Below are positions 9,990 to 52,581 of a stretch of 64,000 bases of DNA, piece by piece. Numbering within the stretch: the stretch's first letter is position 1; each line of letters begins with the position of its first letter. This stretch comes from Macrostomum lignano (taxonomy: Eukaryota). A program made the translations under genes and the position numbers. The notes below the pieces were generated by a model, which saw nothing but the letters and a program-made list of their open reading frames with translations, made no database searches and was not told the origin of the DNA. The DNA lies in NCBI GenBank assembly GCA_002269645.1, contig NIVC01000517.1, forward strand, positions 151,043 through 215,042. Reading direction: 5' to 3'.

Positions 9990-12031
9990 TCAGGCAGACA
10001 CCGGTTGGAATCCGTTCCGCTCAAATTCGGCCCTCAATTCGGCTCTCTTCTCTTTGCTAAGCGGCGCCAAAGGCAGCCGGCAGGGTCCGCCGTACATGCC
10101 AAACAGTTCCATAGCGGCTTTGAGTCCGGGCACGCCCAGTCGCCTAGTTACCAGGCCGTTCGGGCCGATTATACGGCGCTGAAGTTGAGCAGCCGCTTCG
10201 TGGTCGCCGCTGCAGTGTAGATGGTACAGCTGGGCTGTGGGGCCGGGCAGTACGTTGGCGATGGCGCAGACTCCGCCAACGCAGCCCAGCTGAAGCCCGG
10301 GATGAAGCACGCTGCCAGTGCCAGAGAGCACCTTTTTGTTGCGGTATTAGATTGGGAAAATTCAAATTACCTGTAGCTTGAATCATACGCCACGCTGTGA
10401 CCTAGGCTAAGCAAGCACACAGGGTGTACCGCAGGCCTGAATTTACTACTGTCAGACTGGTAGACATGGGAGTTAATCGCACATAAAGTTAAAGTGGATA
10501 AATTAATCAAACGTACGCGACTTTGGTGTGATAGTCGGGACGCGGGAATTGCCGAGAAGAGGGACAAACTGTGGAGACGCAGATTCAGGGACTGATGAAG
10601 GGGCGGAGAGGCAGATTCAGGGACTGAGAGAGGGGCGGAGAGGCAGATTCAGGGACTGATGAAGGGGCGGAGAGGCAGATTCAGGGACTGATGAAGGGGC
10701 GGAGAGGCAGATTCAGGGACTGAGAGAGGGGCGGAGAGGCAGATTCAGGGACTGAGGAAGGGGCGGAGAGGCAGATTCAGGGACTGATGAAGGGGCGGAG
10801 AGGCAGATTCAGGGACTGAGAGAGGGGCGGAGAGGCAGATTCAGGGACTGAGGAAGGGGCGGAGAGGCAGATTCAGGGACTGATGAAGGGGCGGAGAGGC
10901 AGATTCAGGGACTGATGAAGGGGCGGAGAGGCAGATTCAGGGACTGATGAAGGGGCGGAGAGGCAGATTCAGGGACTGATGAAGGGGCGGAGAGGCAGAT
11001 TCAGGGACTGATGAAGGGGCGGAGAGGCAGATTCAGGCACTGAGAGAGGGGCGGAGAGGCAGATTCAGGGACTGATGAAGGGGCGGAGAGGCAGATTCAG
11101 GGACTGATGAAGGGGCGGAGAGGCAGATTCAGGGACTGAGAGAGGGGCGGAGAGGCAGATTCAGGGACTGAGGAAGGGGCGGAGAGGCAGATTCAGGGAC
11201 TGAGGAAGGGGCGGAGAGGCAGATTCAGGGACTGAGGAAGGGGCGGAGAGGCAGATTCAGGGACTGAGGAAGGGCTTAAAGAGTAACCATATTATAAAGC
11301 TTGTACACACGCAGACATTTGCTCACCTGGAAGCCCGGCCGGACAGCGTCCACCACGGTGGCCAGTTTAACCACATCGCCGCTGCTATCCTTAACGCCAG
11401 CAATATTGGGATGGTCAGCCAGACGGGCCATCAGGCTGACTGGCAGGTCATAGCCGGTGCTAGCGGGCATATTATATAGTATTATCGGCCTTGGAGACTG
11501 CTTAGCAACTGTCATATAGTGATCATAAAGCGCCTCTTCGCTAATATGATTGCGAAAGAAGCTGGGGTTGAGTACCAGGAGAGCATCGGCTCCTGCCTCA
11601 ACAAGTCGCTCGCAGGTGGCCAATGTGGCTCTGGTAGTCTCGCAGCCGGCGCCAGCAACCAGGAGGCTGCCTGGCTTCATCAACTGGCGGCATTTAGTTA
11701 CTAGGGCGGCTTTTTCGTCAAGAGTCAAACTGGCTGATTCGCCATTGGTGCCAATGACAACATAGCCTGTGTGACAGGGGGGTGCTTCCTTAGATAAGAT
11801 CAATTTTCTTTAAAAAATACCTCATATGTATACACTTATTATTTTACCTGCAAGGGAGTGCTTATTCCACACTTCAAAATTAATCTGCAGCTTGTCAAAA
11901 TCAATGTCCTCTTTGGCATTGAATGGAGTTGGAATTGGGGGTAGGACACCAGCTAGTTTTATAGATGACATGGATCTTAGCACCATTTTGCTAGATCGAA
12001 TCACTTTATTTAGCTTCAATAGGCTATTCAT
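9990..12031 (-). CDS. HOGA1: 4-hydroxy-2-oxoglutarate aldolase, mitochondrial (DHDPS/NAL family). Exons (minus): 12031-11848, 11766-11327, 10331-9990
   Basis: Basic/Ser-rich N-terminus resembling a mitochondrial presequence; LAGVLPPIPTPF, GTNGE, AGAGCETTRAT, PIILYNMPA (Tyr), HPNIAGVKDS (Schiff-base Lys), GCVGGVCAIANVL, VTRRLGVPGLKAAM, YGGPCRLPL. Intron phases (1,0) join the frames. Confidence 0.95.
10570..11274. repeat. 32-bp minisatellite (GCGGAGAGGCAGATTCAGGGACTGATGAAGGG) in HOGA1 intron 2
   Basis: Tandem units read directly. Confidence 0.95.
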
Positions 12032-16790: not shown

Positions 16791-19228
16791 TTATCAAGCG
16801 CAGTAATCCTTGGCTATCGAGTGCAGTAATCCTTGGTTTATTAATAGCAATAATCCATGGCTTATGAGTGCAGTAATCCTTGGTTTATTAATAGCAATAA
16901 TCCTTGGCTTATCGAGTGCAGTAATTCATGGTTTATTAATAGCAATAATCCTTGGCTTATCGAGTGCAGTAATCCTTGGTTTATTAATAGCAATAATCCT
17001 TGGCTTATCGAGTGCAGTAATCCTTGGTTTATTAATAGCAATAATCCTTGGCTTATCGAGTGCAGTAATCCTTGGTTTATTAATAGCAATAATCCTTGAT
17101 TAATCAAGTGCAGTAATCCTTGGTTTGCCAAGAGCAATAGTCCTTGGTTTATTGAGTGCAGTAATCCTTGGTTTATTAATAGCAATAATCCTTGGCTTAT
17201 CGAGTGCAGTAATCCTTGGTTTATTAATAGCAATAATCCTTGGTTTATCGAGTGCAGTAATCCTTGGTTTGCCAAGTGCATAATCCTTGGTTTATTAATA
17301 GCAATAATCCTTGGTTTATCGAGTGCAGTAATCCTTGGTTTATTAATAGCAATAATCCTTGGCTTATCGAGTGCAGTAATCCTTGGTTTATTAATAGCAA
17401 TAATCCTTGGCTTATCGAGTGCAGTAATCCTTGGTTTATTAATAGCAATAGTCCTTGGTTTATTGAGTGCAGTAATCCTTGGTTTATTAATAGCAATAAT
17501 CCTTGGCTTATCGAGTGCAGTAATCCTTGGTTTATTAATAGCAATAATCCTTGGCTTATCGAGTGCAGTAATCCTTGGTTTGCCAAGAGCAATAGTCCTT
17601 GGCTTATCGAGTGCAGTAATCCTTGGTTTGCCAAGAGCAATAGTTCTTGGTTTATTGAGTGCAGTAATCCTTGGTTTATTAATAGCAATAATCCTTGGCT
17701 TATCGAGTGCAGTAATCCTTGGTTTATTAATAGCAATAATCCTTGGCTTATCGAGTGCAGTAATCCTTGGTTTGCCAAGAGCAATAGTCCTTGGCTTATC
17801 GAGTGCAGTAATCCTTGGTTTGCCAAGAGCAATAGTCCTTGGTTTATTGAGTGCAGTAATCCTTGGTTTATTAATAGCAATAGTCCTTGGTTTATTGAGT
17901 GCAGTAATTTTTGGTTTATTAATAGCAATAATCCTTGGCTTATCGAGTGCAGTAATCCTTGGTTTGCCAAGTGCATAATCCTTGGTTTATTAATAGCAAT
18001 AATCCTTGGTTTATCGAGTGCAGTAATCCTTGGTTTATTAATAGCAATAATCCTTGGTTTATTAATAGCAATAATCCTTGGTTTATCGAGTGCAGTAATC
18101 CTTGGTTTATTAATAGCAATAATCCTTGGCTTATCGAGTGCAGTAATCCTTAGTTTGCCAAGAGCAATAGTTCTTGGTTTATTGAGTGCAGTAATCCTTG
18201 GTTTATTAATAGCAATAATCCTTGGCTTATCGAGTGCAGTAATCCTTGGTTTGCCAAGTGCATAATCCTTGGTTTATTAATAGCAATAATCCTTGGTTTA
18301 TCGAGTGCAGTAATCCTTGGTTTATTAATAGCAATAATCCTTGGTTTATTAATAGCAATAATCCTTGGCTTATCGAGTGCAGTAATCCTTGGTTTATTAA
18401 TAGCAATAATCCTTGGCTTATCGAGTGCAGTAATCCTTAGTTTGCCAAGAGCAATAGTTCTTGGTTTATTGAGTGCAGTAATCCTTGGTTTATTAATAGC
18501 AATAATCCTTGGCTTATCGAGTGCAGTAATCCTTGGTTTGCCAAGTGCATAATCCTTGGTTTATTAATAGCAATAATCCTTGGTTTATCGAGTGCAGTAA
18601 TCCTTGGTTTATTAATAGCAATAATCCTTGGTTTATCGAGTGCAGTAATCCTTGGTTTATTAATAGCAATAATCCTTGGCTTATCGAGTGCAGTAATCCT
18701 TGGTTTGCCAAGAGCAATAGTCCTTGGTTTATTGAGTGCAGTAATCCTTGGTTTATCGAGTGCAGTAATCCTTGGTTTATTAATAGCAATAGTCCTTGGT
18801 TTATTGAGTGCAGTAATTTTTGGTTTATTAATAGCAATAATCCTTGGCTTATCGAGTGCAGTAATCCTTGGTTTGCCAAGTGCATAATCCTTGGTTTATT
18901 AATAGCAATAATCCTTGGTTTATCGAGTGCAGTAATCCTTGGTTTATTAATAGCAATAATCCTTGGCTTATCGAGTGCAGTAATCCTTGGTTTATTAATA
19001 GCAATAATCCATGGCTTATCGAGTGCAGTAATCCTTGGTTTGCCAAGAGCAATAGTCCTTGGCTTATCGAGTGCAGTAATCCTTGGTTTGCCAAGAGCAA
19101 TAGTCCTTGGTTTATTGAGTGCAGTAATCCTTGGTTTATTATTAGCAATAATCCTTGGCTTATCGAGTGCAGTATTCCTTGGTTTGCCAAGAGCAATAAT
19201 CCTTAGCTTATCGAGTGCAGTAATCTAA
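16790..19228. repeat. 24/48-bp dimeric satellite with higher-order structure
   Basis: Alternating GAGTGCAGTAATCCTTGGTTTATT and AATAGCAATAATCCTTGGCTTATC; source of the 8/16-aa periodic ORFs. Confidence 0.95.
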
Positions 19229-26159: not shown

Positions 26160-27994
26160 TTTTGACTTATGTTGGAATGATTCTATTATTTAGAAAATGG
26201 TTTGCAAATATCATTTTCTTGCAATTCTATACCTATTTGACCCTATGGTAAAGCAACATAGGATATGAGCTATATGCATTACAAAAACTAGACATTGTGC
26301 TGAGTTAGAATTCCAGTCAAAATTTCAATACCATTGAGAAGGCACTCATAGTTTTTTTATAGAAAATTTCTTACTGTGTAGCTATGGTCTCCAAAACCAA
26401 TCTGAGCTAGCTAGTTATTGGTGCTAATTTGATGGTCATAGAATGCTTGTATTTAAATGTCTAGTTCTTCAAATAGTTGATTAGTCATACCAAATAAGTG
26501 CAGCACTATTAGTGGTATCTAATCTTGGTAGAGGAAGCCACATAGTTTTTGAGAGTAGCAGCAAACATGTTGTGCAATTTTTTTCTTATTTAGTGCATTA
26601 GTAACTTAAAGCCTATTGCCAAATATTTCAAATCAATCTTTATATGTTCATTTGGCCTGGATTTAAAAAATGATCTGGTAGTCTTATACCAAGGACATAG
26701 ATATATGGTTCTGCAGCACTAAAATCATAGGATTATATTAGAACTTTTCATGTCAATTGCTGCACAGAATGGAAATCTTTGCAGATAAAAAGGATTTATG
26801 ATCTGCTATAGCTTATAGGAATCAGAAACAGATTTAACAATGGCAAGCAGGAGTAATTAGTGAACTTCCCATCTTTATAATGGGAATGGCTTGCACCTTC
26901 TGCTTTTGGCTGATCTTCAAGAAGTTGCCTCTGCTATCAATGTCAACTATTATCAATGTGCCATCATCTATAGTCACTTGAAAACATGCTATCATTCTGT
27001 CAATCAGATTCAAAGGATCAGTGCAGAATATAGTGTTGTACATTTCACTTTTTCCTTTGATATTATCCATGTCCAGATAAAGTCAATTCAAACAAATCAT
27101 TCAGAGCAGAGTTGATGACACTTAGTTTGATACATAAATGTTGCTCAATGCTTTTGCATCTATTCCATTTAAAAAAATGAAGTGGCCAACTTAGTCTGCC
27201 AATATAGCATTTACTTATAATCAGCTGAATTCCTCTATTTGTATAGTGCAATCACCAAAGCCATCTCCTATTAATATAGGATCATGACCTCTAGTTGCCA
27301 ATTAAAAGCTAGAGTTTGAGCTTATAGAAGCAGCCTTAGCTTTAATCATGTCATGTCACCTTACTAAATATATTCTCTCATTGCTGTTGGCAGCCCTCAC
27401 TAAGGAAAGCAGTCAGGCAAACCTCTACCGACCATTGAGTGGCAGCAGTGGCCAGATGACAATGGGTTGGGCCAGATACCTAATTTTTTAGCAAGTGTAA
27501 GATATGTTGAACATTATCTTCTTAAAAATACTTTATTTGGGAAATGTTTAGTTAATAATGATAATAATAATTATTATTATTGTGCAGCCAACAGCTTAGC
27601 CACAGCTATTTCATAGCCCATTGTGCAGCATGTTAGTTTTTTTGGTTACTAAAATGAAGTAACTTATAGATGCTTGTAAGTAGGTTTATATTGATATGCA
27701 TTGAGCTTTTTGTATAATTGTTTTTTTGCCAGAGCAATTGAGCAATTAATTCTATTATGCTAGGAAGTAGATGCACTGTTTCTACAGTTAATCTTAGCTA
27801 AATATAAATGTTTTAGAGAAAACATTATTTTATTGAAACAGTAGTGTATGCACTTCACTTCTTACTCATTATTTAGATTCCTTTTTTGTTTATCTGTGCT
27901 ACTATCTTTGCTTCCTCTGGTTGTCATTGAAATAGTTGTCCATGCCAGTCACCAGGCATCAGCAAAAGAAAAAAGATGATCAGAAAATTAACAG

Positions 27995-29170
27995 ACTACA
28001 AATATAATATACCAATACAATTTTGTGCAACTATCCGCTCTATTGCATTTCCCATGGCTGAATTTGAATTGTCACGTGATTGGCATTGTTAATCGCATCA
28101 TTTGGATTAGTAGTAGAAAGGTGGCATTTCGATTGTGCGATCCTACTGTGCCAAATGGCTTGTCATGTATGGCTGTTAGCAACTGGCCAAGAAAGGCTGG
28201 GCGCGGAGGCCTGCCTCAATTGCACTCAGGCTGGGTGGCCATTGTGCATCGAGCTAGTTTTCAAGGCTCACAAATTTTAATATCGCCAAGCGATGGCGCG
28301 GTGGTCTATACATTTTCAAAAGTTCATTTCAACAGAGGCAGTCTCAATCTTCGAATTGGTGCCAATGTTACTCAGGCTGATTTGCGTACAGTGACGCGTC
28401 TGTTTGTATGGCATCAGTACCAGCTCAGGTGTCGAGCCGTTGGTAAATCCACAGATAATACTAAGCTAGCTTCATTTGGCAAAAGTGCAGCAGCTAATGC
28501 ACTATTAAAGCTGGATCATAATGGTAACAGTCAGCTGAGCCTGCCCAATAAGCAAATTCTTAGCAAAACAGATGAAACTGAACAAATAATCGACTGCAGT
28601 AAGCGTGAGAAACATTTGGGGACCCTTGGACCTGAATTGTCAGTTAACGAGCTGCTATCCTTAGCCGTGTCATTGCCATCAACTGCTTGCAATATTGGCC
28701 TGTGCTTAGCAAAAGTCGCAAAGCTGATGCCCAGTGTACCAGATTTATTAGTGTGGCTGTCTTGCTCTACCTGCAATCAAGTTCAAACAGTCACCTCCAC
28801 TCTCAGCCGAGATTACAAGCCGCCAAATTGTGTCAAATGTCCGACAGGATTGCCGATGCAAGTTAAAAAACGAATTGCATTGCTACTGTCAAATGTTAGT
28901 CATGATGAGGCGGGCAAATCGCCAGAAAAAGATTCGTCTACTGTAAGCGCAAGCGGAATCCTTGCTCACGCGTTCAATGCTAGCGCAGAGAGATTGCTTG
29001 GCACAGTATTGCACGTTGAACACGCAATAGACTTTTGCCAACATCAGGTGCTTAGACAACTGCAGCACAGTCTGTTGGGTCGACGCGTACTAGTCCAAGT
29101 GACTTATTTTCGCAATGCCAACGGCGCTGTCTGTTTCCAATTGGACAATGGAATCGAGCGGATCTTTTGA
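27995..29170 (+). CDS. POT1: POT1-like telomeric ssDNA-binding protein (OB1 + Zn-binding C-terminal OB); start codon unresolved
   Basis: OB1 aligns by eye with human POT1: VIGIV~VYGVV, RLCDPT~TIVDQT, LSCMAVS~LTCLLFS, LPQLHSGWVAIVHRASFQ~LPIIYKNGDIVRFHRLKIQ, TQADLRTVTRLFVW~TTEDHKMVEALRVW. C-terminus: AKVAKLMP..VWLSCSTCNQVQTV~AKLRSYKP..VKLHCPKCHLLQEV, CVKC~CKQC, NGAVCFQL~NGTDNQICYQI. Confidence 0.78.
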   Translation, partial: TTNIIYQYNFVQLSALLHFPWLNLNCHVIGIVNRIIWISSRKVAFRLCDPTVPNGLSCMAVSNWPRKAGRGGLPQLHSGWVAIVHRASFQGSQILISPSDGAVVYTFSKVHFNRGSLNLRIGANVTQADLRTVTRLFVWHQYQLRCRAVGKSTDNTKLASFGKSAAANALLKLDHNGNSQLSLPNKQILSKTDETEQIIDCSKREKHLGTLGPELSVNELLSLAVSLPSTACNIGLCLAKVAKLMPSVPDLLVWLSCSTCNQVQTVTSTLSRDYKPPNCVKCPTGLPMQVKKRIALLLSNVSHDEAGKSPEKDSSTVSASGILAHAFNASAERLLGTVLHVEHAIDFCQHQVLRQLQHSLLGRRVLVQVTYFRNANGAVCFQLDNGIERIF

Positions 29171-29319
29171 TTGACGGACTTTAGAGATTGTTCCATTGTG
29201 TCGTCTGTTTCCTTGTTTGTTAGCTAGACAAGTGCTTTCTCATTTGATCTGATCATTTTGGCTATCACCCTCCTTAATTCTTAGTTTATGGGTCATCGTC
29301 AACCCCCTCCCCTCAGATT

Positions 29320-30210
29320 CTCAGTTACTAGGCCAGCCTCCCAGATCATTAGTTGCTGGGCCACCAGCCTCCCAGATCCTCAGTTGCTGGGCCACCAGCC
29401 TCCCAGATCCTCAGTTGCTGGGCCAGCCTCCCAAATCATCAGTTGCTGAGCCACCAGCCTCCCAGATCCTCAGTTGCTGAGCAAGCCTCCCAGATCCTCA
29501 GTTGCTGGGCCAGCCTCCCAGATCCTCAGTTGCTGGGCCAGCCTCCCAGATCCTCAGTTGCTGGGCCAGCAGCCTCTCAGATCCTCAGTTGCTGAGCCAT
29601 CAGCCTCCCAGATCCCCAGTTGCTGGGCCACCAGCCTCCCAGATCCTCAGTTGCTGAGCCACCAGCCTCCCAGATCCCCAGTTGCTGGGCCACCAGCCTC
29701 CCAGATCCTCAGTTGCTGGGCCACCAGCCTCCCAGATCCTCAGTTGCTGGGCCAGCCTCCCAAATCATCAGTTGCTGAGCCACCAGCCTCCCAGATCCCC
29801 AGTTGCTGGGCCACCAGCCTCCCAGATCCTCAGTTGCTGGGCCACCAGCCTCCCAGATCCTCAGTTGCTGGGCCAGCCTCCCAAATCATCAGTTGCTGAG
29901 CCACCAGCCTCCCAGATCCTCAGTTGCTGAGCCAGCCTCCCAGATCCTCAGTTGCTGGGCCAGCCTCCCAGATCCTCAGTTGCTGGGCCAGCCTCACATA
30001 TGTCAGTTGCTGAGCCAGCCTCCCAGATCCTCAGTTGCTGGGCCAGCCTCACATATGTCAGTTGCCTGGCCAGCCTCTCAGATCCTCAGTTTCTGGGCCA
30101 GCCTCACAGATGTCAGTTGCTGAGCCAGCAGCCTCCCAGATCCCCAGTTGCTGGGACAGCTTCATAGAGTTTCAGTTGCTGGGCCAGTCTCCCAGATCCT
30201 CAGTTGCCTG
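29320..30210. repeat. 26-30-bp minisatellite (CCA[CCA]GCCTCCCAGATCCTCAGTTGCTGGG)
   Basis: Tandem units; same family at 39865-40075. Confidence 0.93.
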
Positions 30211-30995: not shown

Positions 30996-31529
30996 ATGCC
31001 CAGTCAGCAGCAGCAGCAACAGAGAATCGGTGGCAATGTTAGCAGTGTCGGTCCATGGACTGATGCTGTTCACCTGTTCACCTGGGCTCTCTTGTTAGGC
31101 ACGCAATTCTGGATGACTCTGGTCAGCGGGCCAACTTTATTTCGCAACGTTAATATTGAGACTTTTAAAGAAGTACAGGGTGTACTACTGCCGAAGTACT
31201 TCATGGTGCAGACAATGCTTTACTCGGGTCTGTTGTTAATATTTCTTATTCGTTATCGGGCTATTTTACCGCAATCGTCGGGCGTCAGATATGCTGGCGC
31301 GTTGCTAATGGCAACAGTATTGGCGGCAACTCACCAGTTTGTACTGGGCCCAGCTGTCACCAGAGCTATGAACGCTAAATCGCCAAGTTTTCGTAAACTT
31401 CACGGCTGCAGTATGGCTATTAATATGGCGCAAATGTGCATTAGCGTTGTTTATCTGCGTCTGCTACTGTTGCGCTTCAGTTTGCCAACTGATAATTCAA
31501 ATGCTACTCCTGTGAAAAAATCTAGTTAG
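30996..31529 (+). CDS. TMEM205: Transmembrane protein 205 (DUF4149 family), single exon
   Basis: VHLFTWALLLGTQFWMTLVSGPTLFR...TFKEVQGVLLPKYF and FRKLHGCSMAIN match TMEM205 blocks; four hydrophobic segments. Confidence 0.9.
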   Translation: MPSQQQQQQRIGGNVSSVGPWTDAVHLFTWALLLGTQFWMTLVSGPTLFRNVNIETFKEVQGVLLPKYFMVQTMLYSGLLLIFLIRYRAILPQSSGVRYAGALLMATVLAATHQFVLGPAVTRAMNAKSPSFRKLHGCSMAINMAQMCISVVYLRLLLLRFSLPTDNSNATPVKKSS

Positions 31530-32425: not shown

Positions 32426-35400
32426 ATGTCCTACTCCCATCATCGAAGGCCGTATCAGCACGGTCACGGTTACGGTTACGGTCACGGCCACGGCCACGGT
32501 CACGGAGGCTATGGCGGCGGTGGCAGCCATTCGCAGCAGCCGCAGCCGAGCGCTGCTTCCGTTGCCGCCGCCGCCGCTGCGGCCGCCTCCGCTCCGGCAA
32601 TTGACGACGAGGACGCTAGCAGCGTTCAACAAGTTGTCATGGAAGGCCTTGTAGTGCTGAAAATTGCTAAACACTTTCACGAGGAGCAGATGAGCGGTAA
32701 TAGGATTGTTCAGGTGAGAGTTGTAGTCATTGATGTATGCCGATATGCCGTAAATCTCATCTGTGGCGCTAATTTCTCACCTGCGGCGCTAAATTCTCAC
32801 CTATGGCGCTAATTTCTCACCTTCGGCGCTAGAATCTCACCTGTGGTGCTAAAGTCTTACTTGCGGTGCTCAAATCTCACCTGCGGCGCTAAATTCTTAT
32901 CTATGGCGCTAATTTCTCACTTGCGGCGCTAAATTCTTACCTGTGGCGCTAATTTCTCACCTGCGGCGCTAATTTCTCACCTGCGGCGCTAAATTCTCAC
33001 CTATGGCGCTAAATTCTTAACTATGGCGCTAAAATCACACTTATGGCGCTAAAATCTCACCATTGGCGCTAAAATTTCACCTATGGCGCTAAAACTCACA
33101 TATGGCGCTAAATTCTTAACTATGGCGCTAAAACTCACATATGGCGCTAAATTCTTAACTATGGCGCTAAAACTCACCTATGGCGCTAAATTCTCAACTA
33201 TGGCGCTAAAACTCACCTATAGCGCTAAATTCTCAACTATGGCGCTAGAGTATCATCTGTGGCGCTAAATTCTTAACTATCGCGCTAAAACCCACATATG
33301 GCGCTAAAATCTCACCTGTGGCGCTAAATATACCAGTGGAATAATTGAACTAGACCAAAAATTGGCACACTGTTTAGTTAAATTAATATGCATGATAGTG
33401 TCCTTAAGCGGCCTTTAATTTTATTCCCTAAAATCATGTGCTTCAGTAACTTCAGTAAATCATGAACTGTACAACACCTTTTTGGAAACTTAATGTCCCT
33501 TCTGCCTACTCATAGTAGTCTTCATTAGTAGAAAATCGTATTTAATACAAAAACCGTTTCCATTTGCTCCAGGGACTACTGTTCGGTCTGGTCCAGGACA
33601 CCCGCCTGGAGATCACCAACTGTTTCCCGTTTCCTCGCCAATCCGACGACGAAGAGGCGGCAAATAGCGGCTTTGGCATTGTGCCAGTTGCCGAATTTGA
33701 CGCGGCCAAGTATCAGCTGGATATACAGAAGAATTTTCGCCAGCTCAATGCCGACTATCTGACTGTTGGCTGGTACCAGAGCTCCGCTGGGGCCGAGTTT
33801 CTTACTAAAGAGTTTGTGGAATCGCAGTTCCACTATCAGGTGTGTTTAGTAACTAATTTGGTCATTTTATTAGTAATGTGAGATTTTAGATCGTGTGATT
33901 ATTTAATTCAAGATTTTTAAAGAGCATCATTCTCTAATAGAGATGATCAAAAGTGCATGATTCTCTAATTAGGGATTATTCAAAAGTGCATGAATCTCTA
34001 TTTAGAGATGATCAAAAGTGCATGATTCTCTAATTAGATATGATCAAAAGTGCATGATTCTCTAATTAGAGATGATCAAAAGTGCATGATTCTCTAATTA
34101 GAGATGATCAAAAGTGCATGATTCTCTAATTAGATATGATCAAAAGTGCATGATTCTCTAATTAGATATGATCAAAAGTGCATGATTCTCTAATTAGATA
34201 TGATCAAAAGTGCATGATTCTCTAATTAGAGATGATCAAAAGTGCATGATTCTCTAATTAGGGATTATTCAAAAGTGCATGAATCTCTATTTAGAGATGA
34301 TCAAAAGTGCATGATTCTCTAATTAGGGATTATTCAAAAGTGCATGAATCTCTATTTAGAGATGATCAAAAGTGCATGATTCTCTAATTAGGGATTATTC
34401 AAAAGTGCATGAATCTCTATTTAGAGATGATCAAAAGTGCATGATTCTCTAATTAGATATGATCAAAAGTGCATGAATCTCTATTTAGAGATGATCAAAA
34501 GTGCATGATTCTCTAATTAGATATGATCAAAAGTGCATGATTCTCTAATTAGGGATTATTCAAAAGTGCATGAATCTCTAATTAGAGATGATCAAAAGTG
34601 CATGATTCTCTAATTAGATATGATCAAAAGTGCATGATTCTCTAATTAGAGATGATCAAAAGTGCATGATTCTCTAATTAGAGATGATCAAAAGTGCATG
34701 ATTCTCTAATTAGATATGATCAAAAGTGCATGATTCTCTAATTAGATATGATCAAAAGTGCATGATTCTCTAATTAGAGATGATCAAAAGTGCATGATTC
34801 TCTAATTAGATATGATCAAAAGTGCATGATTCTCTAATTAGATATGATCAAAAGTGCATGATTCTCTAATTAGAGATGATCAAAAGTGCATGATTCTCTA
34901 ATTAGGGATTATTCAAAAGTGCATGAATCTCTATTTAGAGATGATCAAAAGTGCATGATTCTCTAATTAGATATGATCAAAAGTGCATGAATCTCTATTT
35001 AGAGATGATCAAAAGTGCATGATTCTCTAATTAGATATGATCAAAAGTGCATGATTCTCTAATTAGGGATTATTCAAAAGTGCATGAATCTCTAATTAGA
35101 GATGATCAAAAGTGCATGATTCTCTAATTAGAGATGATCAAAAGTGCATGATTCTCTAATTAGAGATGATCAAAAGTGCATGATTCTCTAATTAGATATG
35201 ATCAAAAGTGCATGATTCTCTAATTAGATATGATCAAAAGTGCATGATTCTCTAATTAGAGATGATCAAAAATGCATGATTCTCTAATTAGATATGATCA
35301 AAAGTGCATGATTCTCTAATTAGATATGATCAAAAGTGCATGATTCTCTAATTAGAGATGATCAAAAGTGCATGATTCTCTAATTAGGGATTATTCAAAA

Positions 35401-37196
35401 GTGCATGAATCTCTATTTAGAGATGATCAAAAGTGCATGATTCTTTAATTAGGGATTATTCAAAAGTGCATGAATCTCTATTTAGAGATGATCAAAAGTG
35501 CATGATTCTCTAATTAGATATGATCAAAAGTGCATGATTCTCTAATTAGAGATTATTACTCGTAAAAGTACATGATTCTCTAGTTAGAGATTATTAAAAG
35601 TGCATTATTCTCTAACTGGAAATGTGATTTAAAAGTGCATTCGAACTGCATGTTTCTCCATGAGTTAACTAAGTACAAAAGCCTAAGTAAAATATAAATT
35701 GTTCAAGTCTCACCTAATTCCAGGTGGGTGTACTGGACGCCGTTGCTCTGGTGTACAATCCGCTGAAGACCAGCCGCGGTCAGCTGGAATTTCGCGCATT
35801 CCGCCTGTCCCCGGCGCTGGTGAAGCTGATGAGCGATGAGGACAATGTGAATCAGCAGCGCATGAAAGAGCTGATGGTTAATCAGGCTAATTTAGTGCAA
35901 GAATTGCCCGTGATTATTCGCAATAGTCACCTGGCTAATGTACTGCTAGCTGAGCTAGAGGACAGCGTCGCTAGTAACGCATTCTCCGGCCTGAGCCTGG
36001 CTATGGGCAGCCAGCTCGAGAGGCAGATGAAGTCTCTGTCGACTGGTTGCGAAGTGATTCTGCAAGAGTCCTCCAAATATCTTAATTATCAACGATCGTA
36101 TAAGAAGTATGAGAAGGCGCTTCAGGTATGCGGGTGTTTCGCTAATTATTTTTATAATCCTAATTGCCTACAAATGACCTTTACATTATGCATCGCATGA
36201 TCTTCACATTATCCGTCACTTGATGTTCACATTATTTATCGCATGATCTTCACATAATCAATCACGTGACCCTCAAGTAGCAGTCACGTGACCCTCAAGT
36301 AGCAGTCACGTGACCCTCACACAATCAATCACGTGACCCCCGCATAATCAATCACGTGACCCTCACACAATCAATCACGTGACCCCCGCATAATCAATCA
36401 CGTGGCCCTCACATAATCAATCACGTGACCCCCGCATAATCAATCACGTGACCCTCACACAATCAATCACGTGACCCCCGCATAATCAATCACGTGACCC
36501 TCACACAATCAATCACGTGACCCCCGCATAATCAATCACGTGGCCCTCACATAATCAATCACGTGACCCCCGCATAATCAATCACGTGACCCCCGCATAA
36601 TCAATCACGTGGCCCTCACATAATCAATCACGTGGCCCTCACATAATCAATCACGTGATCCTCACACAATCAATCACGTGACCCCCGCATAATCAATCAC
36701 GTGGCCCTCACACAATCAATCACGTGGCCCTCACATAATCAATCACGTGACCCCCGCATAATCAATCACGTGGCCCTCACACAATCAATCACGTGACCCC
36801 CGCATAATCAATCACGTGACCGCCGCATAATCAATCACGTGACCCCCGCATAATCAATCACGTGGCCCTCACACAATCAATCACGTGACCTTCGCATAAT
36901 CAATCACGTGGCCCTCACACAATCTATCACGTGACCCTAACACAATCAATCCCGTGACCCAGGACCAGAAGATGAAGATAGTCTACGAGAATCAGCAGCG
37001 AGCCCAACGCGGCGAAGAGCCTCTCAGCGAGGACGCCATCGACAAGTCGAAGCTGCCTAAGATTGGAAATCCGCCAGTGGCCCTCGATCCCGTGCTGGTG
37101 TCGGCCCAGCTGCACCAGTTCACTAGCGAACTGCTGGAGACTGTTGGACAGTCCTACGGCAAACTCATGCTGGCTGAGGGTATCCAGTTCAATTGA
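32426..37196 (+). CDS. EIF3H: Eukaryotic translation initiation factor 3 subunit H. Exons: 32426-32713, 33573-33839, 35724-36125, 36963-37196
   Basis: VQQVVMEGLVVLKIAKH, GLLFGLV..RLEITNCFPFP, VGWYQS, VYNPLKT.RG.L.FRAFRL, ELPVIIRNSHL, ENQQRAQRGEEPL, YGKLMLAEGIQ match the eIF3h MPN-domain protein; all three introns GT-AG, phase 0. Confidence 0.96.
32750..33330. repeat. ~21-bp minisatellite (CTATGGCGCTAAATTCTCAC) in eIF3h intron 1
   Basis: Tandem units read directly. Confidence 0.93.
33930..35640. repeat. 32-bp minisatellite (GATCAAAAGTGCATGATTCTCTAATTAGAGAT) in eIF3h intron 2
   Basis: Tandem units with a recurring GGATTATTC variant. Confidence 0.96.
36250..36960. repeat. 23-bp minisatellite (AATCAATCACGTGACCCCCGCAT) in eIF3h intron 3
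   Basis: Tandem units, each with CACGTG, running up to the acceptor AG. Confidence 0.95.
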
Positions 37197-38022: not shown

Positions 38023-39455
38023 ATGTCTTCTCTAGCTCTATCCACGTCCACCAAAGTAAAGATGCTGTCAGTGCTTGAAGACATCGAACTATTATCTAAA
38101 GCTCTTTTCGAGGCTTTAGCAACTCGAGAACAATGCAGCACTTCGGACCGCTCAGCATCCGGTCAGCAGCAGCAGCAGCAGCAGCCTCTAGAACTCAACT
38201 GCGAAGCCTTAGTTGAGCAGCTTCGTTTGCGCGAGGCTAAACTGCACCGACTGCGCGATCAGGCCGCCAAACAGCAGCAGCTGCACGAGAAAGCCAATCA
38301 GCTGCGAGCTCTTATTGATCAGCAGGATTTGGCCATTGGTCAGCATCAGCGGCAACTAATGGAAGCTGATCGATTACTGTCGGTAAGGCACTTGCTGCAG
38401 ACCAATCACAGCCATTCTAGACAGTATACATTTGCTCCCGACCAATCGCAGCCTTTCTAGACAGTGTACACTTGCTCCTGACCAATCACAGCCACTCTAG
38501 ACAGTGTAAACTTGCTCCTGATCAATCACAGCCATTCTAGACTGTAAACTTGCTCCTGACCAATCACAGCCACTCTAGACAGTGTAAACTTGCTCCTGAC
38601 CAATCACAGCCATTCTAGACTGTTTAAACTTGCTCCTGACCAATCACAGCCATTCTAGACAGTGTAAACTTGCTCCTGACCAATCACAGCCATTCTAGAC
38701 TGTGTAAACTTGCTCCTGACCAATCACAGCCATTCTAGACAGTGTAAACTTGCTCCTGACCAATCACAGCCATTCTAGACTGTGTAAACTTGCTCCTGAC
38801 CAATCACAGCCATTCTAGACTGTGTACACTTGCTCCTGACCAATCAGAACCATTCTAGGAGGCTAAAGTCGCTCTTGACCAATAAGAGCCATTTAGACTG
38901 TTTACTCACGCTCTCGACCAATAACTATCACAGCTATTCTAGACAGTGCAATTTATGTACACTCGCTCCCCGCCACCCCAATCCCAGGTAGCGATATTCT
39001 ACTCGCGTCAGAAATTAGAATCGCTGCAAACCGCCTGTCAAAACCCTGCCGACTCTGAGGAGTTGGTCAAATTTGCGCACAAAATCAGCGCCAGCAACGG
39101 CGTGATGGCGCCCCTCGGCTGGGGCCTCGGCGATCCGCGCCGGCCCTACCCGACCGCCAACGAGATGGCCAGAGGCCTGCTCAAGCACGTCGATGAGCAC
39201 GGCAACTTTCAGCCGGGTATTGTTGAAGAGGTGGCCTCTTTGTCTGCTGCAGCTGCCGCCGCTGCTGCCGCCGCCGCTGCTGGAAGACAGCAACAACAGC
39301 AGCAGCAGCAACAGCAACAACAATATCCACAGCAAATGTCAGCTTCATCTGCAGCCTCTTCAACTGCTCAAGCTCAACCAACAGCTGGTGCATCCGCTGA
39401 GCAAGTTGAAACTATGAGCAGTGACTCTTCGAGCAGCTCATCGTCTGGCGATTGA
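38023..39455 (+). CDS. MED4: Mediator complex subunit 4. Exons: 38023-38382, 38988-39455
   Basis: STKVKMLSVLEDIELLSKALFE, EELVKFAHKISASNGVMAPLGW..GDPRRPYPT..EM..GLL and terminal ETMSSDSSSSSSSGD match MED4; phase-0 GT-AG intron. Confidence 0.95.
38395..38945. repeat. 40-bp minisatellite (GACCAATCACAGCCATTCTAGACAGTGTAAACTTGCTCCT) filling the MED4 intron
   Basis: About 13-14 units, each with CCAATCA. Confidence 0.95.
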
Positions 39456-40127: not shown

Positions 40128-41105
40128 ATGTCCAACGGAGATTCTCACCAGCAGCAGCAGTCAGCTGAGCCGCTGGTCCCTGAGATAACGGACCCCGAGG
40201 CTGAGTCGCTGGACTTTGAGCACAGCCGCATTGGCCGTTTAGCTGGTCTAGAGTGTCTAACCAAAATTCGTGCGCTCTGCTTTCGCAACAATCTGCTCAA
40301 AGCGATTGAGAATGTGGGCTGCCTGGCTGGCACCCTGACCGAACTCGATCTGTACGACAATCAAATCGAACGCCTGGAGAACTTGGAGCAGCTGACTAAA
40401 CTCGAACACTTGGACGTGTCATTTAATCGCCTATCAAAGATTGAAGGATTGGAGACTTTAGTGAGGCTGCGTAAACTCTACTTGGTGCAGAATCGTATTG
40501 GCAAGATTGAATGCTTGGACAGTTTGATTGAGTTGGAGATTCTCGAATTAGGCGCGAATAGAATCCGCCAGATTGAAAGTCTGGACACTCTGACTAATCT
40601 GCGCGAGTTATACCTCGGCTCTAATAAGATCTCTCGCATTGAAGGCTTGGAACGGCTCACGCAGTTGAGAATCTTAGCTTTAGCCGCTAATAGGCTCACC
40701 AGCATTGAGAATCTTGGCCATCTCACCCAGCTTAACGAGCTCTACTTATCTGAGAACGGTATCCAACAAATTGAAAATCTTGACACGTTGACTAATCTGC
40801 GAATCCTTGATTTGGCTCAGAATCGAATTTCAAGTCTGGATAATTTGTCTAATTTGACTTCCCTCGAAGAGCTGTGGCTTGACAATAATCGATTAGATAA
40901 TTTTGCCGAAATTGAAAAACTAACCAGCTTGCCAAGGTTGAGCACTGTGCTGTTTGAGCACAATCCGATTTTCTACACGTCGGACAAGACGCCGGATCCG
41001 GCTTATAGGCGTAAAGTGCTGCTAATACTGCCGCAGCTCAAGCAGCTTGACGCCACTCTCACTTCTCAGCAGGCAGCTAACGAATTGCTCGGCCAGTCTG
41101 CTTGA
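40128..41105 (+). CDS. PPP1R7: Protein phosphatase 1 regulatory subunit 7 (Sds22), leucine-rich repeat protein, single coding exon
   Basis: About 11-12 SDS22-type LRRs (LxxLxLxxNxIxxIExL), LTELDLYDNQI, LEELWLDNN and LRR cap NPI...DPAYRRKVLLILPQLKQLDAT; ATG at 40128 follows TGCAG acceptor (upstream part of the ORF is repeat-derived). Confidence 0.93.
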   Translation: MSNGDSHQQQQSAEPLVPEITDPEAESLDFEHSRIGRLAGLECLTKIRALCFRNNLLKAIENVGCLAGTLTELDLYDNQIERLENLEQLTKLEHLDVSFNRLSKIEGLETLVRLRKLYLVQNRIGKIECLDSLIELEILELGANRIRQIESLDTLTNLRELYLGSNKISRIEGLERLTQLRILALAANRLTSIENLGHLTQLNELYLSENGIQQIENLDTLTNLRILDLAQNRISSLDNLSNLTSLEELWLDNNRLDNFAEIEKLTSLPRLSTVLFEHNPIFYTSDKTPDPAYRRKVLLILPQLKQLDATLTSQQAANELLGQSA

Positions 41106-42499: not shown

Positions 42500-45400
42500 T
42501 TAGATTCGCCTCTAAACTGTCCTTAGAGTCGTGTCTAAACTGTCCTTAGAGTCTTCACTAAACTTTCCTTAGAGTCGCCTCTAAACTGTCCTTAGAGTCG
42601 TGTCTAAACTGTCCTTAGAGTCGTGTCTAAACTGTCCTTAGAGTCTTCACTAAACTTTCCTTAGAGTCGTATCTAAACTGTCCTTAGAGTCGCCTCTAAA
42701 CTGTCCTTAGAGTCGCCTCTAAACTGTCCTTAGAGTCGTGTCTAAACTGTCCTTAGAGTCGTATCTAAACTGTCCTTAGAGTCTTCACTAAACTGTCCTT
42801 AGAGTCTTCACTAAACTTTCCTTAGAGTCGTGTCTAAACTGTCCTTAGAGTCGTGTCTAAACTGTCCTTAGAGTCGTATCTAAACTGTCCTTAGAGTCGC
42901 CTCTAAACTGTCCTTAGAGTCGTGTCTAAACTGTCCTTAGAGTCGTGTCTAAACTTTCCTTAGAGTCGCCTCTAAACTGTCCTTAGAGTCGTGTCTAAAC
43001 TGTCCTTAGAGTCGTGTCTAAACTGTCCTTAGAGTCGCCTCTAAACTGTCCTTAGAGTCGTGTCTAAACTGTCCTTAGAGTCGTGTCTAAACTTTCCTTA
43101 GAGTCGCCTCTAAACTGTCCTTAGAGTCGTGTCTAAACTTTCCTTAGAGTCGCCTCTAAACTGTCCTTAGAGTCGTGTCTAAACTGTCCTTAGAGTCGCC
43201 TCTAAACTGTCCTTAGAGTCGCCTCTAAACTGTCCTTAGAGTCGTGTCTAAACTGTCCTTAGAGTCGCCTCTAAACTGTCCTTAGAGTCGTGTCTAAACT
43301 GTCCTTAGAGTCGCCTCTAAACTGTCCTTAGAGTCGCCTCTAAACTGTCCTTAGAGTCGCCTCTAAACTGTCCTTAGAGTCGCCTCTAAACTGTCCTTAG
43401 AGTCGTGTCTAAACTGTCCTTAGAGTCGCCTCTAAACTGTCCTTAGAGTCGCCTCTAAACTGTCCTTAGAGTCGTGTCTAAACTTTCCTTAGAGTCGCCT
43501 CTAAACTGTCCTTAGAGTCGTGTCTAAACTGTCCTTAGAGTCGCCTCTAAACTGTCCTTAGAGTCGCCTCTAAACTGTCCTTAGAGTCGTGTCTAAACTG
43601 TCCTTAGAGTCGCCTCTAAACTGTCCTTAGAGTCGCCTCTAAACTGTCCTTAGAGTCGTGTCTAAACTGTCCTTAGAGTCGTATCTAAACTGTCCTTAGA
43701 GTCGCCTCTAAACTGTCCTTAGAGTCGTGTCTAAACTGTCCTTAGAGTCGTGTCTAAACTTTCCTTAGAGTCGCCTCTAAACTGTCCTTAGAGTCGTGTC
43801 TAAACTGTCCTTAGAGTCGTGTCTAAACTGTCCTTAGAGTCGCCTCTAAACTGTCCTTAGAGTCGTGTCTAAACTGTCCTTAGAGTCGTGTCTAAACTTT
43901 CCTTAGAGTCGCCTCTAAACTGTCCTTAGAGTCGTGTCTAAACTTTCCTTAGAGTCGCCTCTAAACTGTCCTTAGAGTCGTGTCTAAACTGTCCTTAGAG
44001 TCGCCTCTAAACTGTCCTTAGAGTCGCCTCTAAACTGTCCTTAGAGTCGTGTCTAAACTGTCCTTAGAGTCGCCTCTAAACTGTCCTTAGAGTCGCCTCT
44101 AAACTGTCCTTAGAGTCGCCTCTAAACTGTCCTTAGAGTCGCCTCTAAACTGTCCTTAGAGTCGTGTCTAAACTGTCCTTAGAGTCGCCTCTAAACTGTC
44201 CTTAGAGTCGCCTCTAAACTGTCCTTAGAGTCGTGTCTAAACTGTCCTTAGAGTCGTGTCTAAACTGTCCTTAGAGTCGTATCTAAACTGTCCTTAGAGT
44301 CGCCTCTAAACTGTCCTTAGAGTCGTGTCTAAACTGTCCTTAGAGTCGTGTCTAAACTTTCCTTAGAGTCGCCTCTAAACTGTCCTTAGAGTCGTGTCTA
44401 AACTGTCCTTAGAGTCGTGTCTAAACTGTCCTTAGAGTCGCCTCTAAACTGTCCTTAGAGTCGTGTCTAAACTGTCCTTAGAGTCGTGTCTAAACTTTCC
44501 TTAGAGTCGCCTCTAAACTGTCCTTAGAGTCGTGTCTAAACTTTCCTTAGAGTCGCCTCTAAACTGTCCTTAGAGTCGTGTCTAAACTGTCCTTAGAGTC
44601 GCCTCTAAACTGTCCTTAGAGTCGCCTCTAAACTGTCCTTAGAGTCGTGTCTAAACTGTCCTTAGAGTCGCCTCTAAACTGTCCTTAGAGTCGTGTCTAA
44701 ACTGTCCTTAGAGTCGTGTCTAAACTGTCCTTAGAGTCGTGTCTAAACTGTCCTTAGAGTCGTGTCTAAACTGTCCTTAGAGTCGCCTCTAGACTGTCCT
44801 TAGAGTCGCCTCTAGACTGTCCTTAGAGTCGCCTCTAAACTGTCCTTAGAGTCGCCTCTAAACTGTCCTTAGAGTCGTCTTTAAACTGTTGTTAGAGTCG
44901 CCTCTAAACTGTCCTTGGAGTCGTGTCTAAACTGTCCTTAGAGTCGTCTTTAAACTGTCCTTAGAGTCGCCTCTAAACTGTCCTTAGAGTCGCCTTTAAA
45001 CTGTTGTTAGAGTCGCCTCTAAACTGTCCTTGGAGTCGTGTCTAAACTGTCCTTAGAGTCGTCTTTAAACTTCCTTAGAGTCGCCTCTAAACTGTTCTTA
45101 GAGTCGTCTTTAAACTGTTGTTAGAGTCGCCTCTAAACTGTCCTTAGAGTCGTCTCCAGACTGTCCTTAGAGTCGCCTCTAAACTGTCTTTCGAGTCGCC
45201 TCCAGACTGTCCTTAGAGTCGTCTTTAAACTATTCTTAGAGTCGCCTCTAAACTGTCCTTAGAGTCGCCTCTAAACTGTCCTTAGAGTCGCTCTAAACTG
45301 TTCTTAGAGTCGCCTCTAAACTGTCCTTAGAGTCGTCTTTAAACTGTCCTTAGAGTCGCTTCTAAACTGTCCTTAGAGTCGTGTCTAAACTGTCCTTAGA

Positions 45401-52397: not shown

Positions 52398-52428
<31 letters not shown>

Positions 52429-52433
52429 CTGCC

Positions 52434-52480
<47 letters not shown>

Positions 52481-52505
52481 CTGCCTGTCTGTCTGTCTGT
52501 CTGAC

Positions 52506-52572
<67 letters not shown>

Positions 52573-52581
52573 CTGTCTGCC

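What the first reader, a model, noticed from the sequence alone, without database searches (positions are those of the whole stretch)
27995..29170. Minimal two-domain POT1: OB1 joined to a Zn-OB3, with no OB2 and no HJRL insertion
Seen: a ~390-codon ORF whose first ~135 aa align with POT1 OB1 and whose last ~175 aa align with the POT1 C-terminal OB, with CSTC (28763-28774) and CVKC (28829-28840) only 18 residues apart. Known: human POT1 has OB1-OB2 for ssDNA binding and a ~145-aa Holliday-junction-resolvase-like domain inserted between these two CxxC pairs; OB3 and HJRL together bind TPP1. Inference: this protein binds telomeric ssDNA with one OB fold and has a simple RPA70C-like Zn ribbon, implying a reduced or different shelterin interface. 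The ~65-aa linker is too short for OB2.
Basis: partly seen in the sequence, partly recalled or inferred. Interest (0 to 1): 0.8.

Follow-up and report, generated by a model that had tools for sequence, protein, structure and literature searches.

The report
Orphan flatworm zinc-ribbon protein, possibly POT1-like
This is a real but frameshifted copy of a gene found only in the flatworm Macrostomum lignano; its protein has a zinc-ribbon tail that faintly resembles the planarian telomere protein POT1, but the tools here could not show that it is a "minimal POT1".

Summary
The window is Macrostomum lignano (NIVC01000517.1).

The frame has no start codon of its own. A duplicated locus encodes an intact 407-aa protein (PAA85234.1) starting at the ATG that corresponds to window 27942. 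In the window, a 5-bp tandem duplication (~28001-28005) shifts the frame and creates a stop at 28005-28007. This copy is therefore a broken allele or an assembly error.

The claimed alignment to POT1 could not be reproduced at any accepted threshold:
- Pfam, PDB phmmer, BLASTP against human POT1 and hhalign gave nothing.
- An exhaustive scan of 1.8 billion proteins found no homologue outside the protein's own cluster.
- Two AlphaFold runs failed (pLDDT 35-37).

Only the C-terminal β1 plus zinc-ribbon segment shows weak similarity to POT1 OB3, mostly through planarian SmedOB1 (empirical P about 0.001-0.02). SmedOB1 also lacks the HJRL insertion. The N-terminal "OB1" match is not robust.

The two copies differ by 9 nonsynonymous and 0 synonymous changes.

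Verdict: a fast-evolving orphan gene. A POT1-like identity is plausible (about 40%) but unproven. Interest is moderate to low.

The parts
27934..27935 (+). Candidate 3' splice or trans-splice acceptor AG, preceded by a pyrimidine-rich tract, 6 nt upstream of the native ATG
   Evidence: Read from the sequence...ctatctttgcttcctctggttgtcattgaaatag|ttgtccATG. The M. lignano spliced leader ends in ATG (PMC8629364). Spliced at this site, it would be in frame with ATG 27942. This is inference only; no transcript data were available.
27942..28007 (+). Native start codon and first 21 codons (MPVTRHQQKKKDDQKINRLQI), ending in a premature TAA at 28005-28007 in this copy
   Evidence: The intact copy P0002 starts MPVTRHQQKKKDDQKINRIQIYQYNF. 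DNA alignment A1.
28001..28005 (+). 5-bp insertion (tandem AATAT duplication; exact position ambiguous within about 27999-28010) that shifts the ATG frame relative to the main frame
   Evidence: Columns 123-127 of alignment A1 against L002.
27995..29170 (+). The open frame as reported: 391 codons plus stop, with no start codon of its own
28169..29170 (+). CDS as annotated in GenBank for this copy (P0001, 333 aa, from the first in-frame ATG). It lacks the first 74 residues of the intact protein.
28007..28426 (+). N-terminal domain of about 140 aa (residues 21-160 of the 407-aa protein). It is a putative OB fold, followed by the helix TEADLRTVTRLFVW. All 9 differences between the two copies lie in this domain or in the first few linker codons (28052-28487).
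   Evidence: hhalign aligns residues 20-160 end to end with POT1 OB1 5-144 at 23% identity, but P=0.056. The match is not robust. Substitutions.
28427..28651 (+). Low-complexity linker of about 75 aa, too short for an OB fold
   Evidence: Sequence. No match to OB1 or OB2 profiles.
28652..29167 (+). C-terminal domain of about 170 aa with a zinc-ribbon motif. It is a putative Zn-OB of the POT1-OB3 / RPA70-DBD-C type.
28763..28774 (+). First CxxC (CSTC)
28829..28840 (+). Second CxxC (CVKC), 18 residues after the first
28892..28957 (+). Ser/Lys/Glu-rich loop (NVSHDEAGKSPEKDSSTVSASG). It is treated as an insertion in the hhalign alignment to RPA70 DBD-C.
28500..29300 (+). Tract of about 800 bp that is 100% identical to the duplicated locus. 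It covers the C-terminal half of the gene and the start of the 3' flank.
   Evidence: Binned alignment. Upstream intergenic DNA differs by 5-8%.

Best explanation
This is one of two near-identical copies of a single-exon gene restricted to the Macrostomum lineage. The intact copy is BOX15_Mlig026483g4 (PAA85234.1, 407 aa).

The window copy carries a 5-bp tandem duplication after codon 20. From its native ATG it encodes only 21 residues. At best it yields a 333-aa product from ATG 28169 that lacks the first 74 residues of the intact protein. It is therefore a broken allele, a young pseudogene, or a PacBio assembly indel.

The intact protein has three parts:
- an N-terminal domain of about 140 aa with many alternating-hydrophobic stretches;
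- a disordered linker of about 75 aa;
- a C-terminal domain of about 170 aa whose CxxC-x18-CxxC most likely binds one zinc ion as a zinc ribbon.

My best guess at function is inferred, not shown. I read it as a strongly diverged, fast-evolving single-stranded-DNA-binding protein of the POT1 kind. The C-terminal Zn-OB would correspond to POT1 OB3 in the short, HJRL-less form also seen in planarian SmedOB1. The N-terminal domain would be the DNA-binding OB.

Shown: the gene structure, the frameshift, the cysteine motif, orphan status, and the excess of nonsynonymous changes. Inferred: the OB folds, zinc binding, and any telomere role.
For: Gene structure and identity:
- Contig identity and organism.
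- The intact paralogous copy has the same neighbours (DUF4149 and eIF3h).
- Frameshift.
- The two copies share 378 of 387 aligned residues.
- Coding-like composition and codon usage in this frame.

C-terminal similarity to POT1 OB3:
- The top hhalign segment against full-length mammalian POT1 is AKVAKLMP..CSTC aligned to AKLRSYKP..CPKC.
- BLASTP against SmedOB1 gives its best hit at residues 255-304 against 361-410, E=0.027.
- POT1-OB3 profile (mammals plus SmedOB1): 7.4 bits. Shuffles reach this 4/3000 times, or 17/3000 with cysteines fixed. Real control proteins score -0.6 or lower.
- hhalign P=0.0047, empirical 2/240.
- Smith-Waterman against the SmedOB1 C-terminus: 5/1000.
- The RPA70-DBD-C profile scores lower: 111/3000.

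Other points:
- SmedOB1 itself has CSCC-x15-CPKC and no HJRL.
- The N-terminal domain aligns colinearly with POT1 OB1, with matching domain boundaries and a shared T-x-x-D-x-x-x-V-x-x-L-x-x-W helix.
- M. lignano already has a canonical RPA1 elsewhere.
Against: - No Pfam POT1, POT1PC, HJRL or Rep_fac-A_C hit.
- No POT1 or RPA among PDB hits at E<=10.
- BLASTP against human POT1 gave nothing.
- Mammal-only POT1 HMMs scored no better than shuffles.
- The N-terminal signal is beaten by an unrelated exon and fades when S. pombe Pot1 is added. It also matches an OB2 profile about as well.
- Part of the C-terminal score is driven by cysteines. The same segment matches a PINCH LIM finger at E=0.0014, which shows how easily such segments match by chance.
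- Planarian OB1 is well conserved, so a true orthologue this diverged would be unusual.
- The two copies show 9 nonsynonymous and 0 synonymous differences, so purifying selection is not demonstrated.
- No structure model was obtained.
Confidence: 0.4

Rival explanations
1. It is a lineage-specific orphan protein with a generic zinc ribbon and no evolutionary relationship to POT1 or RPA. The weak similarities arise from the CxxC pairs and from amphipathic patterns. Its function could be any nucleic-acid or protein binding by a zinc ribbon.
For: - No homologue at all among 1.84 billion cluster representatives, nor at E<=10 in the 5.8-billion-protein index.
- No Pfam family.
- The strongest database match of the ribbon is to a LIM finger of PINCH.
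- N-terminal profile scores lie within the range of unrelated proteins.
- AlphaFold gives no confident fold.
Against: - Domain-specific, colinear, sub-threshold matches to SmedOB1 in both halves (11/1000 and 5/1000), with negative cross-controls.
- The C-terminal score persists with cysteines fixed.
- Only one of the two LIM fingers could be present, and there is no Pfam LIM hit.
Confidence: 0.3
2. It is a diverged RPA70-DBD-C-like (or CTC1/Teb1-like) zinc-OB protein, not a POT1. In that case it would be a general or specialised ssDNA-binding paralogue.
For: - hhalign of the C-terminus against an RPA70C profile (human, Ustilago and yeast; human sequence verified against PDB, the other two copied from its printed alignments) aligns CVKCPTGLP..KRI..LLS..ILAHAFNASAERLLG with CEKCDTEFP..YRMILS..WVTCFQESAEAILG, P=0.039.
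- Empirical score: 7/240.
- The short ribbon spacing is like RPA70C, not like human POT1.
Against: - The RPA70C HMM score is not above shuffles once the cysteines are fixed (347/3000), and an unrelated exon scores higher.
- No Pfam Rep_fac-A_C hit.
- The POT1-OB3 profile scores better.
- M. lignano has a canonical RPA1, Mlig015525.g1.
Confidence: 0.12
3. The locus is a decaying or non-functional gene: both copies drift neutrally and this one is already broken. No current function needs explaining.
For: - Frameshift in the window copy.
- 9 nonsynonymous and 0 synonymous differences, against 0 and 4 in the neighbouring DUF4149 gene (Fisher exact 1/715, my calculation).
- Weak codon bias: 0.04 bits per codon against 0.19-0.44 for neighbouring genes.
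Against: - The other copy keeps an intact 407-codon frame.
- Apart from the 5-bp insertion there are no indels in 1.16 kb, while the flanks are full of them.
- The excess of nonsynonymous changes is equally compatible with positive selection.
- The gene model comes from the genome authors' annotation, which (from my own knowledge, not checked here) was transcriptome-based; the only direct trace is the locus tag.
Confidence: 0.18

Closest known systems
SmedOB1, the POT1 homologue of the planarian Schmidtea mediterranea (PMC5032016)
   Same: - It comes from a flatworm.
- Its C-terminal domain has an AR/KV..P strand followed by two CxxC pairs only 15 residues apart (18 here), so it has no HJRL insertion.
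- It shares 'PM' after the second pair and a similar C-terminal hairpin.
- It is the best pairwise match of the M. lignano protein.
   Different: - SmedOB1 is about 500 aa. Its OB1 is clearly recognisable (Pfam POT1 66.7 bits; human POT1 at E=1.4e-11).
- It has an OB2-like middle region (…LILIWDGT…GDYVYFHRV…, read by eye).
- The M. lignano protein has neither a recognisable OB1 nor room for an OB2.
Human POT1 (PDB 1XJV, 5H65, 5UN7, 7QXB)
   Same: - Possible colinear correspondence of an N-terminal OB followed by a helix, and of a C-terminal Zn-binding OB.
- The four zinc ligands are two CxxC pairs.
   Different: - Human POT1 has OB2 and an HJRL domain, with about 117 residues between the CxxC pairs.
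- There is no significant sequence similarity.
RPA70 DNA-binding domain C (PDB 1L1O), Pfam Rep_fac-A_C
   Same: - An OB fold interrupted by a short zinc ribbon.
- A …F-x-x-S-A-E-x-L-L-G helix motif after the ribbon.
   Different: - The ribbon is C-x4-C-x13-C-x2-C.
- RPA70 has three further OB folds.
- No Pfam hit, and the profile score is not above controls.
Single-OB telomere proteins of Caenorhabditis elegans (POT-1/CeOB2, POT-2/CeOB1), cited in PMC5032016 and known to me
   Same: They are a precedent for POT1-family proteins reduced to fewer OB folds than the vertebrate protein.
   Different: As far as I recall, they have one OB fold and no C-terminal Zn-OB. This was not tested here.

Membership tests
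POT1 (protection of telomeres 1) | N-terminal OB1 that matches the Telo_bind/POT1 profile (Pfam PF02765) | tested here: not met
   No hit at E<=10 for the full protein or for isolated N-terminal pieces. SmedOB1 scores 66.7 bits on the same model. Custom profiles give P of 0.01-0.1 and are outscored by an unrelated exon.
POT1 (protection of telomeres 1) | Second OB fold (OB2, Pfam PF16686 POT1PC) next to OB1 | tested here: not met
   No Pfam hit. Only a low-complexity linker of about 75 aa lies between the two domains. The linker does not match an OB2 profile.
POT1 (protection of telomeres 1) | C-terminal OB3 with four Cys zinc ligands arranged as two CxxC pairs | tested here: inconclusive
   Two CxxC pairs are present. 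Similarity to an OB3 profile is weak but above controls: 4/3000, 17/3000 with cysteines fixed, hhalign P=0.0047, BLASTP against SmedOB1 E=0.027. The fold itself could not be modelled.
POT1 (protection of telomeres 1) | HJRL domain inserted in OB3 (Pfam PF21375), as in vertebrate POT1 | tested here: not met
   Only 18 residues separate the CxxC pairs and there is no Pfam hit. Planarian SmedOB1 also lacks it (15 residues), so this feature does not define the family across animals.
POT1 (protection of telomeres 1) | Sequence-specific binding of telomeric G-strand ssDNA, and binding of a TPP1-like partner | not testable with these tools
   Needs EMSA or pull-down experiments. The M. lignano proteome could not be searched for TPP1 or for a canonical POT1.
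RPA70 DBD-C (Rep_fac-A_C, PF08646) | Match to the family profile, with a C-x4-C-x13-C-x2-C zinc ribbon inside an OB fold | tested here: not met
   No Pfam hit. The spacing differs (CxxC-x18-CxxC). A three-sequence profile gives 111/3000, or 347/3000 with cysteines fixed.
LIM domain | Two consecutive zinc fingers with eight ligands, matching PF00412 | tested here: not met
   Only PINCH LIM5 matches one finger (E=0.0014-0.02). There is no Pfam LIM hit. A first finger of the form C-x2-C-x17-H-x2-C is absent.

The most novel reading that the evidence does not exclude
This gene is the only POT1 orthologue of Macrostomum lignano: a two-domain POT1 (OB1 plus a short Zn-ribbon OB3) that has lost OB2. 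Its DNA-binding domain evolves under positive selection (9 nonsynonymous and 0 synonymous differences between the two copies). If so, a regenerating flatworm with TTAGGG-type telomeres would cap its chromosome ends with single-OB recognition.
Probability: 0.2. Interest if true: 0.6.

Novelty: new variant of a known kind. Interest (0 to 1): 0.35.

Why it matters
M. lignano is a model for stem cells, regeneration and ageing, and I found no description of its chromosome-end protection proteins in the literature I could search.

If this orphan is a POT1 reduced to OB1 plus a zinc-ribbon OB3, two things would follow:
- OB2 would be dispensable in an animal with vertebrate-type repeats.
- Together with SmedOB1, it would show that the HJRL insertion is not an ancestral animal feature.

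As things stand, the practical value is more modest:
- The GenBank model of this copy (333 aa) is an artefact of a frameshift.
- The gene has no detectable relatives.
- The POT1 label should not be propagated without a structure or a binding assay.

Tried and rejected
- Homologue searches. The indexed search found only the protein's own cluster, and again at E<=10. The exhaustive phmmer over 1.84 billion representatives gave the same result. A metagenome contig scan found nothing.
Those sequences served as a narrow profile but did not reach flatworm POT1 proteins. Whether M. lignano has a canonical POT1 therefore remains unanswered.
- Pfam on the whole protein, on split domains and on a loop-deleted C-terminus gave only noise: DUF3182 and HAMP.
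- PDB phmmer gave only a PINCH LIM finger and a phage protein. I rejected LIM as a chance match to a single finger.
- AlphaFold2 without an alignment gave unusable models for the full frame (pLDDT 36.9) and for the N-terminal 160 aa (pLDDT 34.8). No fold search was run, because the matches would be meaningless.
- I did not feed AlphaFold a POT1 alignment, because that would have forced the answer.
- Smith-Waterman against single domains of human POT1 and RPA70 was uninformative. One z=4 hit of the linker to yeast Rfa1 aligned to the ribbon without any cysteines and was discarded.
I rejected this because the upstream sequence is purine-rich and the intact copy uses the ATG at 27942.
- Literature and supplement searches for an M. 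lignano POT1 or for Mlig026483 found nothing.

Full report
WHAT IS THERE

The window is part of Macrostomum lignano contig NIVC01000517.1, assembly GCA_002269645.1. On the + strand an open frame of 391 codons runs from 27995 to 29167, with the stop at 29168-29170. CSTC is encoded at 28763-28774 and CVKC at 28829-28840, with 18 residues between them, exactly as reported.

Several features point to a real coding exon:
- The region has about 50% G+C, against about 35% around it.
- The frame shows GC1 above GC2, and the best codon-usage score of the six frames. The bias is weaker than in neighbouring conserved genes.

GENE STRUCTURE AND THE FRAMESHIFT

The frame has no ATG until 28169. GenBank's model for this copy starts there (P0001, 333 aa).

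The 90% cluster holds a second protein: PAA85234.1, BOX15_Mlig026483g4, 407 aa. It is encoded as one uninterrupted exon on contig NIVC01000340.1, next to the same DUF4149 and eIF3h genes. That locus is therefore a duplicated or homeologous copy. It starts MPVTRHQQKKKDDQKINRIQIYQYNF.

The corresponding ATG in the window is at 27942, but in another frame. The DNA alignment shows a 5-bp insertion in the window, a duplicated AATAT at about 28001-28005. As a result the ATG frame ends at TAA 28005-28007.

The window copy is a frameshifted allele, a young pseudogene, or an assembly indel.

I considered trans-splicing at the CAG before 27995, because the M. lignano spliced leader ends in ATG (PMC8629364). 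I judged it unlikely. A better acceptor, a pyrimidine tract followed by AG, lies at 27934-35 just upstream of the native ATG. That placement is inference only.

Because the intact copy is one continuous exon, extra exons supplying OB2 or HJRL are not expected.

EVOLUTION OF THE TWO COPIES

Downstream of the insertion, the two copies share 378 of 387 aligned residues.

- All nine differences are nonsynonymous and fall between 28052 and 28487. None is synonymous.
- From about 28500 to about 29300 the two loci are identical at the DNA level. Intergenic DNA upstream of 27750 differs by 5-8% and carries many indels.
- The neighbouring DUF4149 gene shows the opposite pattern: 4 synonymous and 0 nonsynonymous differences. 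The contrast gives a Fisher exact P of 1/715 (my calculation).

Purifying selection on this protein is therefore not demonstrated. The pattern fits a recent conversion tract combined with relaxed or positive selection on the N-terminal domain.

IS IT POT1? STANDARD TESTS

All standard tests were negative.
- Pfam gave no POT1 (PF02765), POT1PC (PF16686), HJRL (PF21375) or Rep_fac-A_C (PF08646) hit. This held for the whole protein, for isolated domains and for a loop-deleted C-terminus.
- phmmer against the PDB at E<=10 found no POT1 or RPA. It found only one zinc finger of PINCH LIM5 (E=0.0014-0.02) and a phage protein.
- BLASTP against human POT1 found nothing. My recalled human sequence had first been checked against 7QXB.
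- hhalign against 24 mammalian POT1 proteins gave P=0.19.
- Mammal-only HMMs for OB1, OB2 and OB3 scored within the range of shuffles.
- The protein has no detectable homologue outside its own cluster, in the indexed search, in an exhaustive phmmer over 1.84 billion representatives, or in metagenome contigs.
- AlphaFold2 without an alignment failed twice (pLDDT 36.9 and 34.8).

IS IT POT1? MORE SENSITIVE TESTS

The supplement of the SmedOB1 paper (PMC5032016) gives the planarian POT1 homologue's protein sequence, as OCR text.

SmedOB1's OB1 is plainly POT1: Pfam 66.7 bits and human POT1 in the PDB at E=1.4e-11. Its C-terminus reads …ARVVKVHPS…FCSCCQELRDMKDVSQLAYACPKCAVPIPM…. That is two CxxC pairs 15 residues apart with no HJRL. 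The HJRL-less ribbon is therefore not peculiar to M. lignano.

C-terminal half:
- BLASTP of the 407-aa protein against SmedOB1 gives its best hit at exactly the homologous place, residues 255-304 against 361-410, E=0.027.
- On an OB3 profile built from mammals plus SmedOB1, the C-terminal half scores 7.4 bits. Shuffles reach that score 4/3000 times, or 17/3000 with the cysteines held in place.
- Ten real control proteins from the window, and the reversed sequences, all score -0.6 bits or lower.
- hhalign gives P=0.0047 and an empirical 2/240.
- Smith-Waterman against the SmedOB1 C-terminus gives 5/1000, or 22/1000 with cysteines fixed.
- An RPA70-DBD-C profile was built from the human, Ustilago and yeast sequences (human checked against PDB; the other two copied from its alignments). 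It aligns the segment after the ribbon (…AFNASAERLLG with …CFQESAEAILG) but scores lower: 111/3000, or 347/3000 with cysteines fixed.

N-terminal half:
- It aligns end to end with POT1 OB1 in a sensible register: residues 20-160 against 5-144, 23% identity. The alignment includes LP…G-x-V-x-I-V-HR and the T-x-x-D-x-x-x-V-x-x-L-x-x-W helix.
- The statistics are weak: HMM 32/3000, hhalign 9/240, Smith-Waterman against SmedOB1 11/1000.
- An OB2 profile does about as well.
- An unrelated exon from the window outscores it on the OB1 HMM.
- Adding S. pombe Pot1, verified against 7CUH, lowers the signal to 298/3000 and hhalign P=0.27.

READING

The C-terminal domain is probably a zinc-ribbon OB of the POT1-OB3 / RPA70C kind, closest to the planarian POT1 form. 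I put that at roughly even odds.

The N-terminal domain may be an OB fold, but calling it POT1 OB1 is not supported by any robust test.

M. lignano has a canonical RPA1 elsewhere (Mlig015525.g1), so this is not the replicative RPA. Whether it also has a canonical POT1 could not be checked. POT1 does not appear in the M. lignano supplements held as text, but those tables are partial.

I give about 40% to a diverged POT1-like ssDNA-binding protein. About half of that would be "the" POT1 orthologue. I give about 30% to an unrelated zinc-ribbon orphan, about 12% to an RPA/CTC1-like protein, and the rest to a decaying gene.

COMPARISON WITH KNOWN PROTEINS AND NOVELTY

The closest known protein is SmedOB1. 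It shares the short ribbon and the flanking motifs. It differs in having a recognisable OB1 and an OB2-like middle region.

Compared with human POT1, this protein lacks OB2 and HJRL and shows no significant similarity. C. elegans single-OB POT proteins are a precedent for reduced POT1 architectures (from my own knowledge and PMC5032016).

If the POT1 reading holds, this is a new variant of a known kind, not a new kind of system. Loss of OB2 would be the new element, because loss of HJRL is shared with planarians.

SCORES

Interest is 0.35. The idea is attractive to telomere biologists working on a regeneration model. However, the evidence is sub-threshold, the window copy is broken, and partial precedents exist.

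Noticed in passing
window 28052-28487 versus 28500-29300; L002 10100-11360: Between the two gene copies, all 9 substitutions are nonsynonymous and cluster in the N-terminal domain and the first few linker codons. The next ~800 bp are identical, including the 3' flank. The neighbouring DUF4149 gene has 4 synonymous and 0 nonsynonymous differences. This suggests a gene-conversion tract combined with relaxed or positive selection.
   Followed up: partly
window 29314-30207: A 31-bp minisatellite of about 30 copies starts about 140 bp after the stop codon. In one frame it reads PPRSSVAGPPASQILSCWA… and creates several spurious ORFs. The same unit recurs at the 5' end of the ORF at 39939, upstream of the PPP1R7/SDS22-like leucine-rich-repeat gene.
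   Followed up: partly
whole window, e.g. 42500-47247, 16791-19225, 33919-35615, 60026-61682, 52398-54264: The window is packed with long minisatellite arrays with periods of 18-72 bp and up to 206 copies, plus (TGTC)n and (GACA)n tracts of 0.4-1.9 kb. TRF returns 34 rows at score 400 or above. They generate most of the long 'ORFs' in the mechanical list.
   Followed up: no
window 28757-28888 (residues 255-298 of the 391-aa frame): The zinc-ribbon segment matches the second finger of LIM5 of human PINCH-1 (LIMS1) and its following helix, with 17 identities over 44 residues and E=0.0014-0.02 against the PDB. I judged this a chance match to one finger, because there is no first finger and no Pfam LIM hit.
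   Followed up: yes
window 27880-27941: A pyrimidine-rich tract followed by AG at 27934-35 lies 6 nt upstream of the native ATG. It looks like a 3' splice or spliced-leader acceptor. The ATG of the M. lignano leader would be in frame with the native ATG.
   Followed up: no
window 30996-31529, 32426-37196, 38023-39455, 40140-41105, 11276-11803 (-), 4728-5249 (-): Neighbouring genes: a DUF4149 (TMEM205-like) single-exon gene and eIF3h (JAB plus eIF3h_C). Read by eye only from the ORF translations: a glutamine-rich gene, a PPP1R7/SDS22-like LRR gene almost entirely in one exon, a dihydrodipicolinate-synthase-like exon, and a dynein light-intermediate-chain-like exon. Synteny with the second locus holds at least through eIF3h.
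   Followed up: partly
SmedOB1 protein (supplement of PMC5032016), residues ~160-290 and ~355-498: The published planarian 'one-OB' POT1 homologue appears by eye to contain an OB2-like region (…LILIWDGT…GDYVYFHRV…). It also has a C-terminal Zn-ribbon OB (CSCC-x15-CPKC) without an HJRL insertion. The paper describes neither feature. Pfam detects only OB1.
   Followed up: partly
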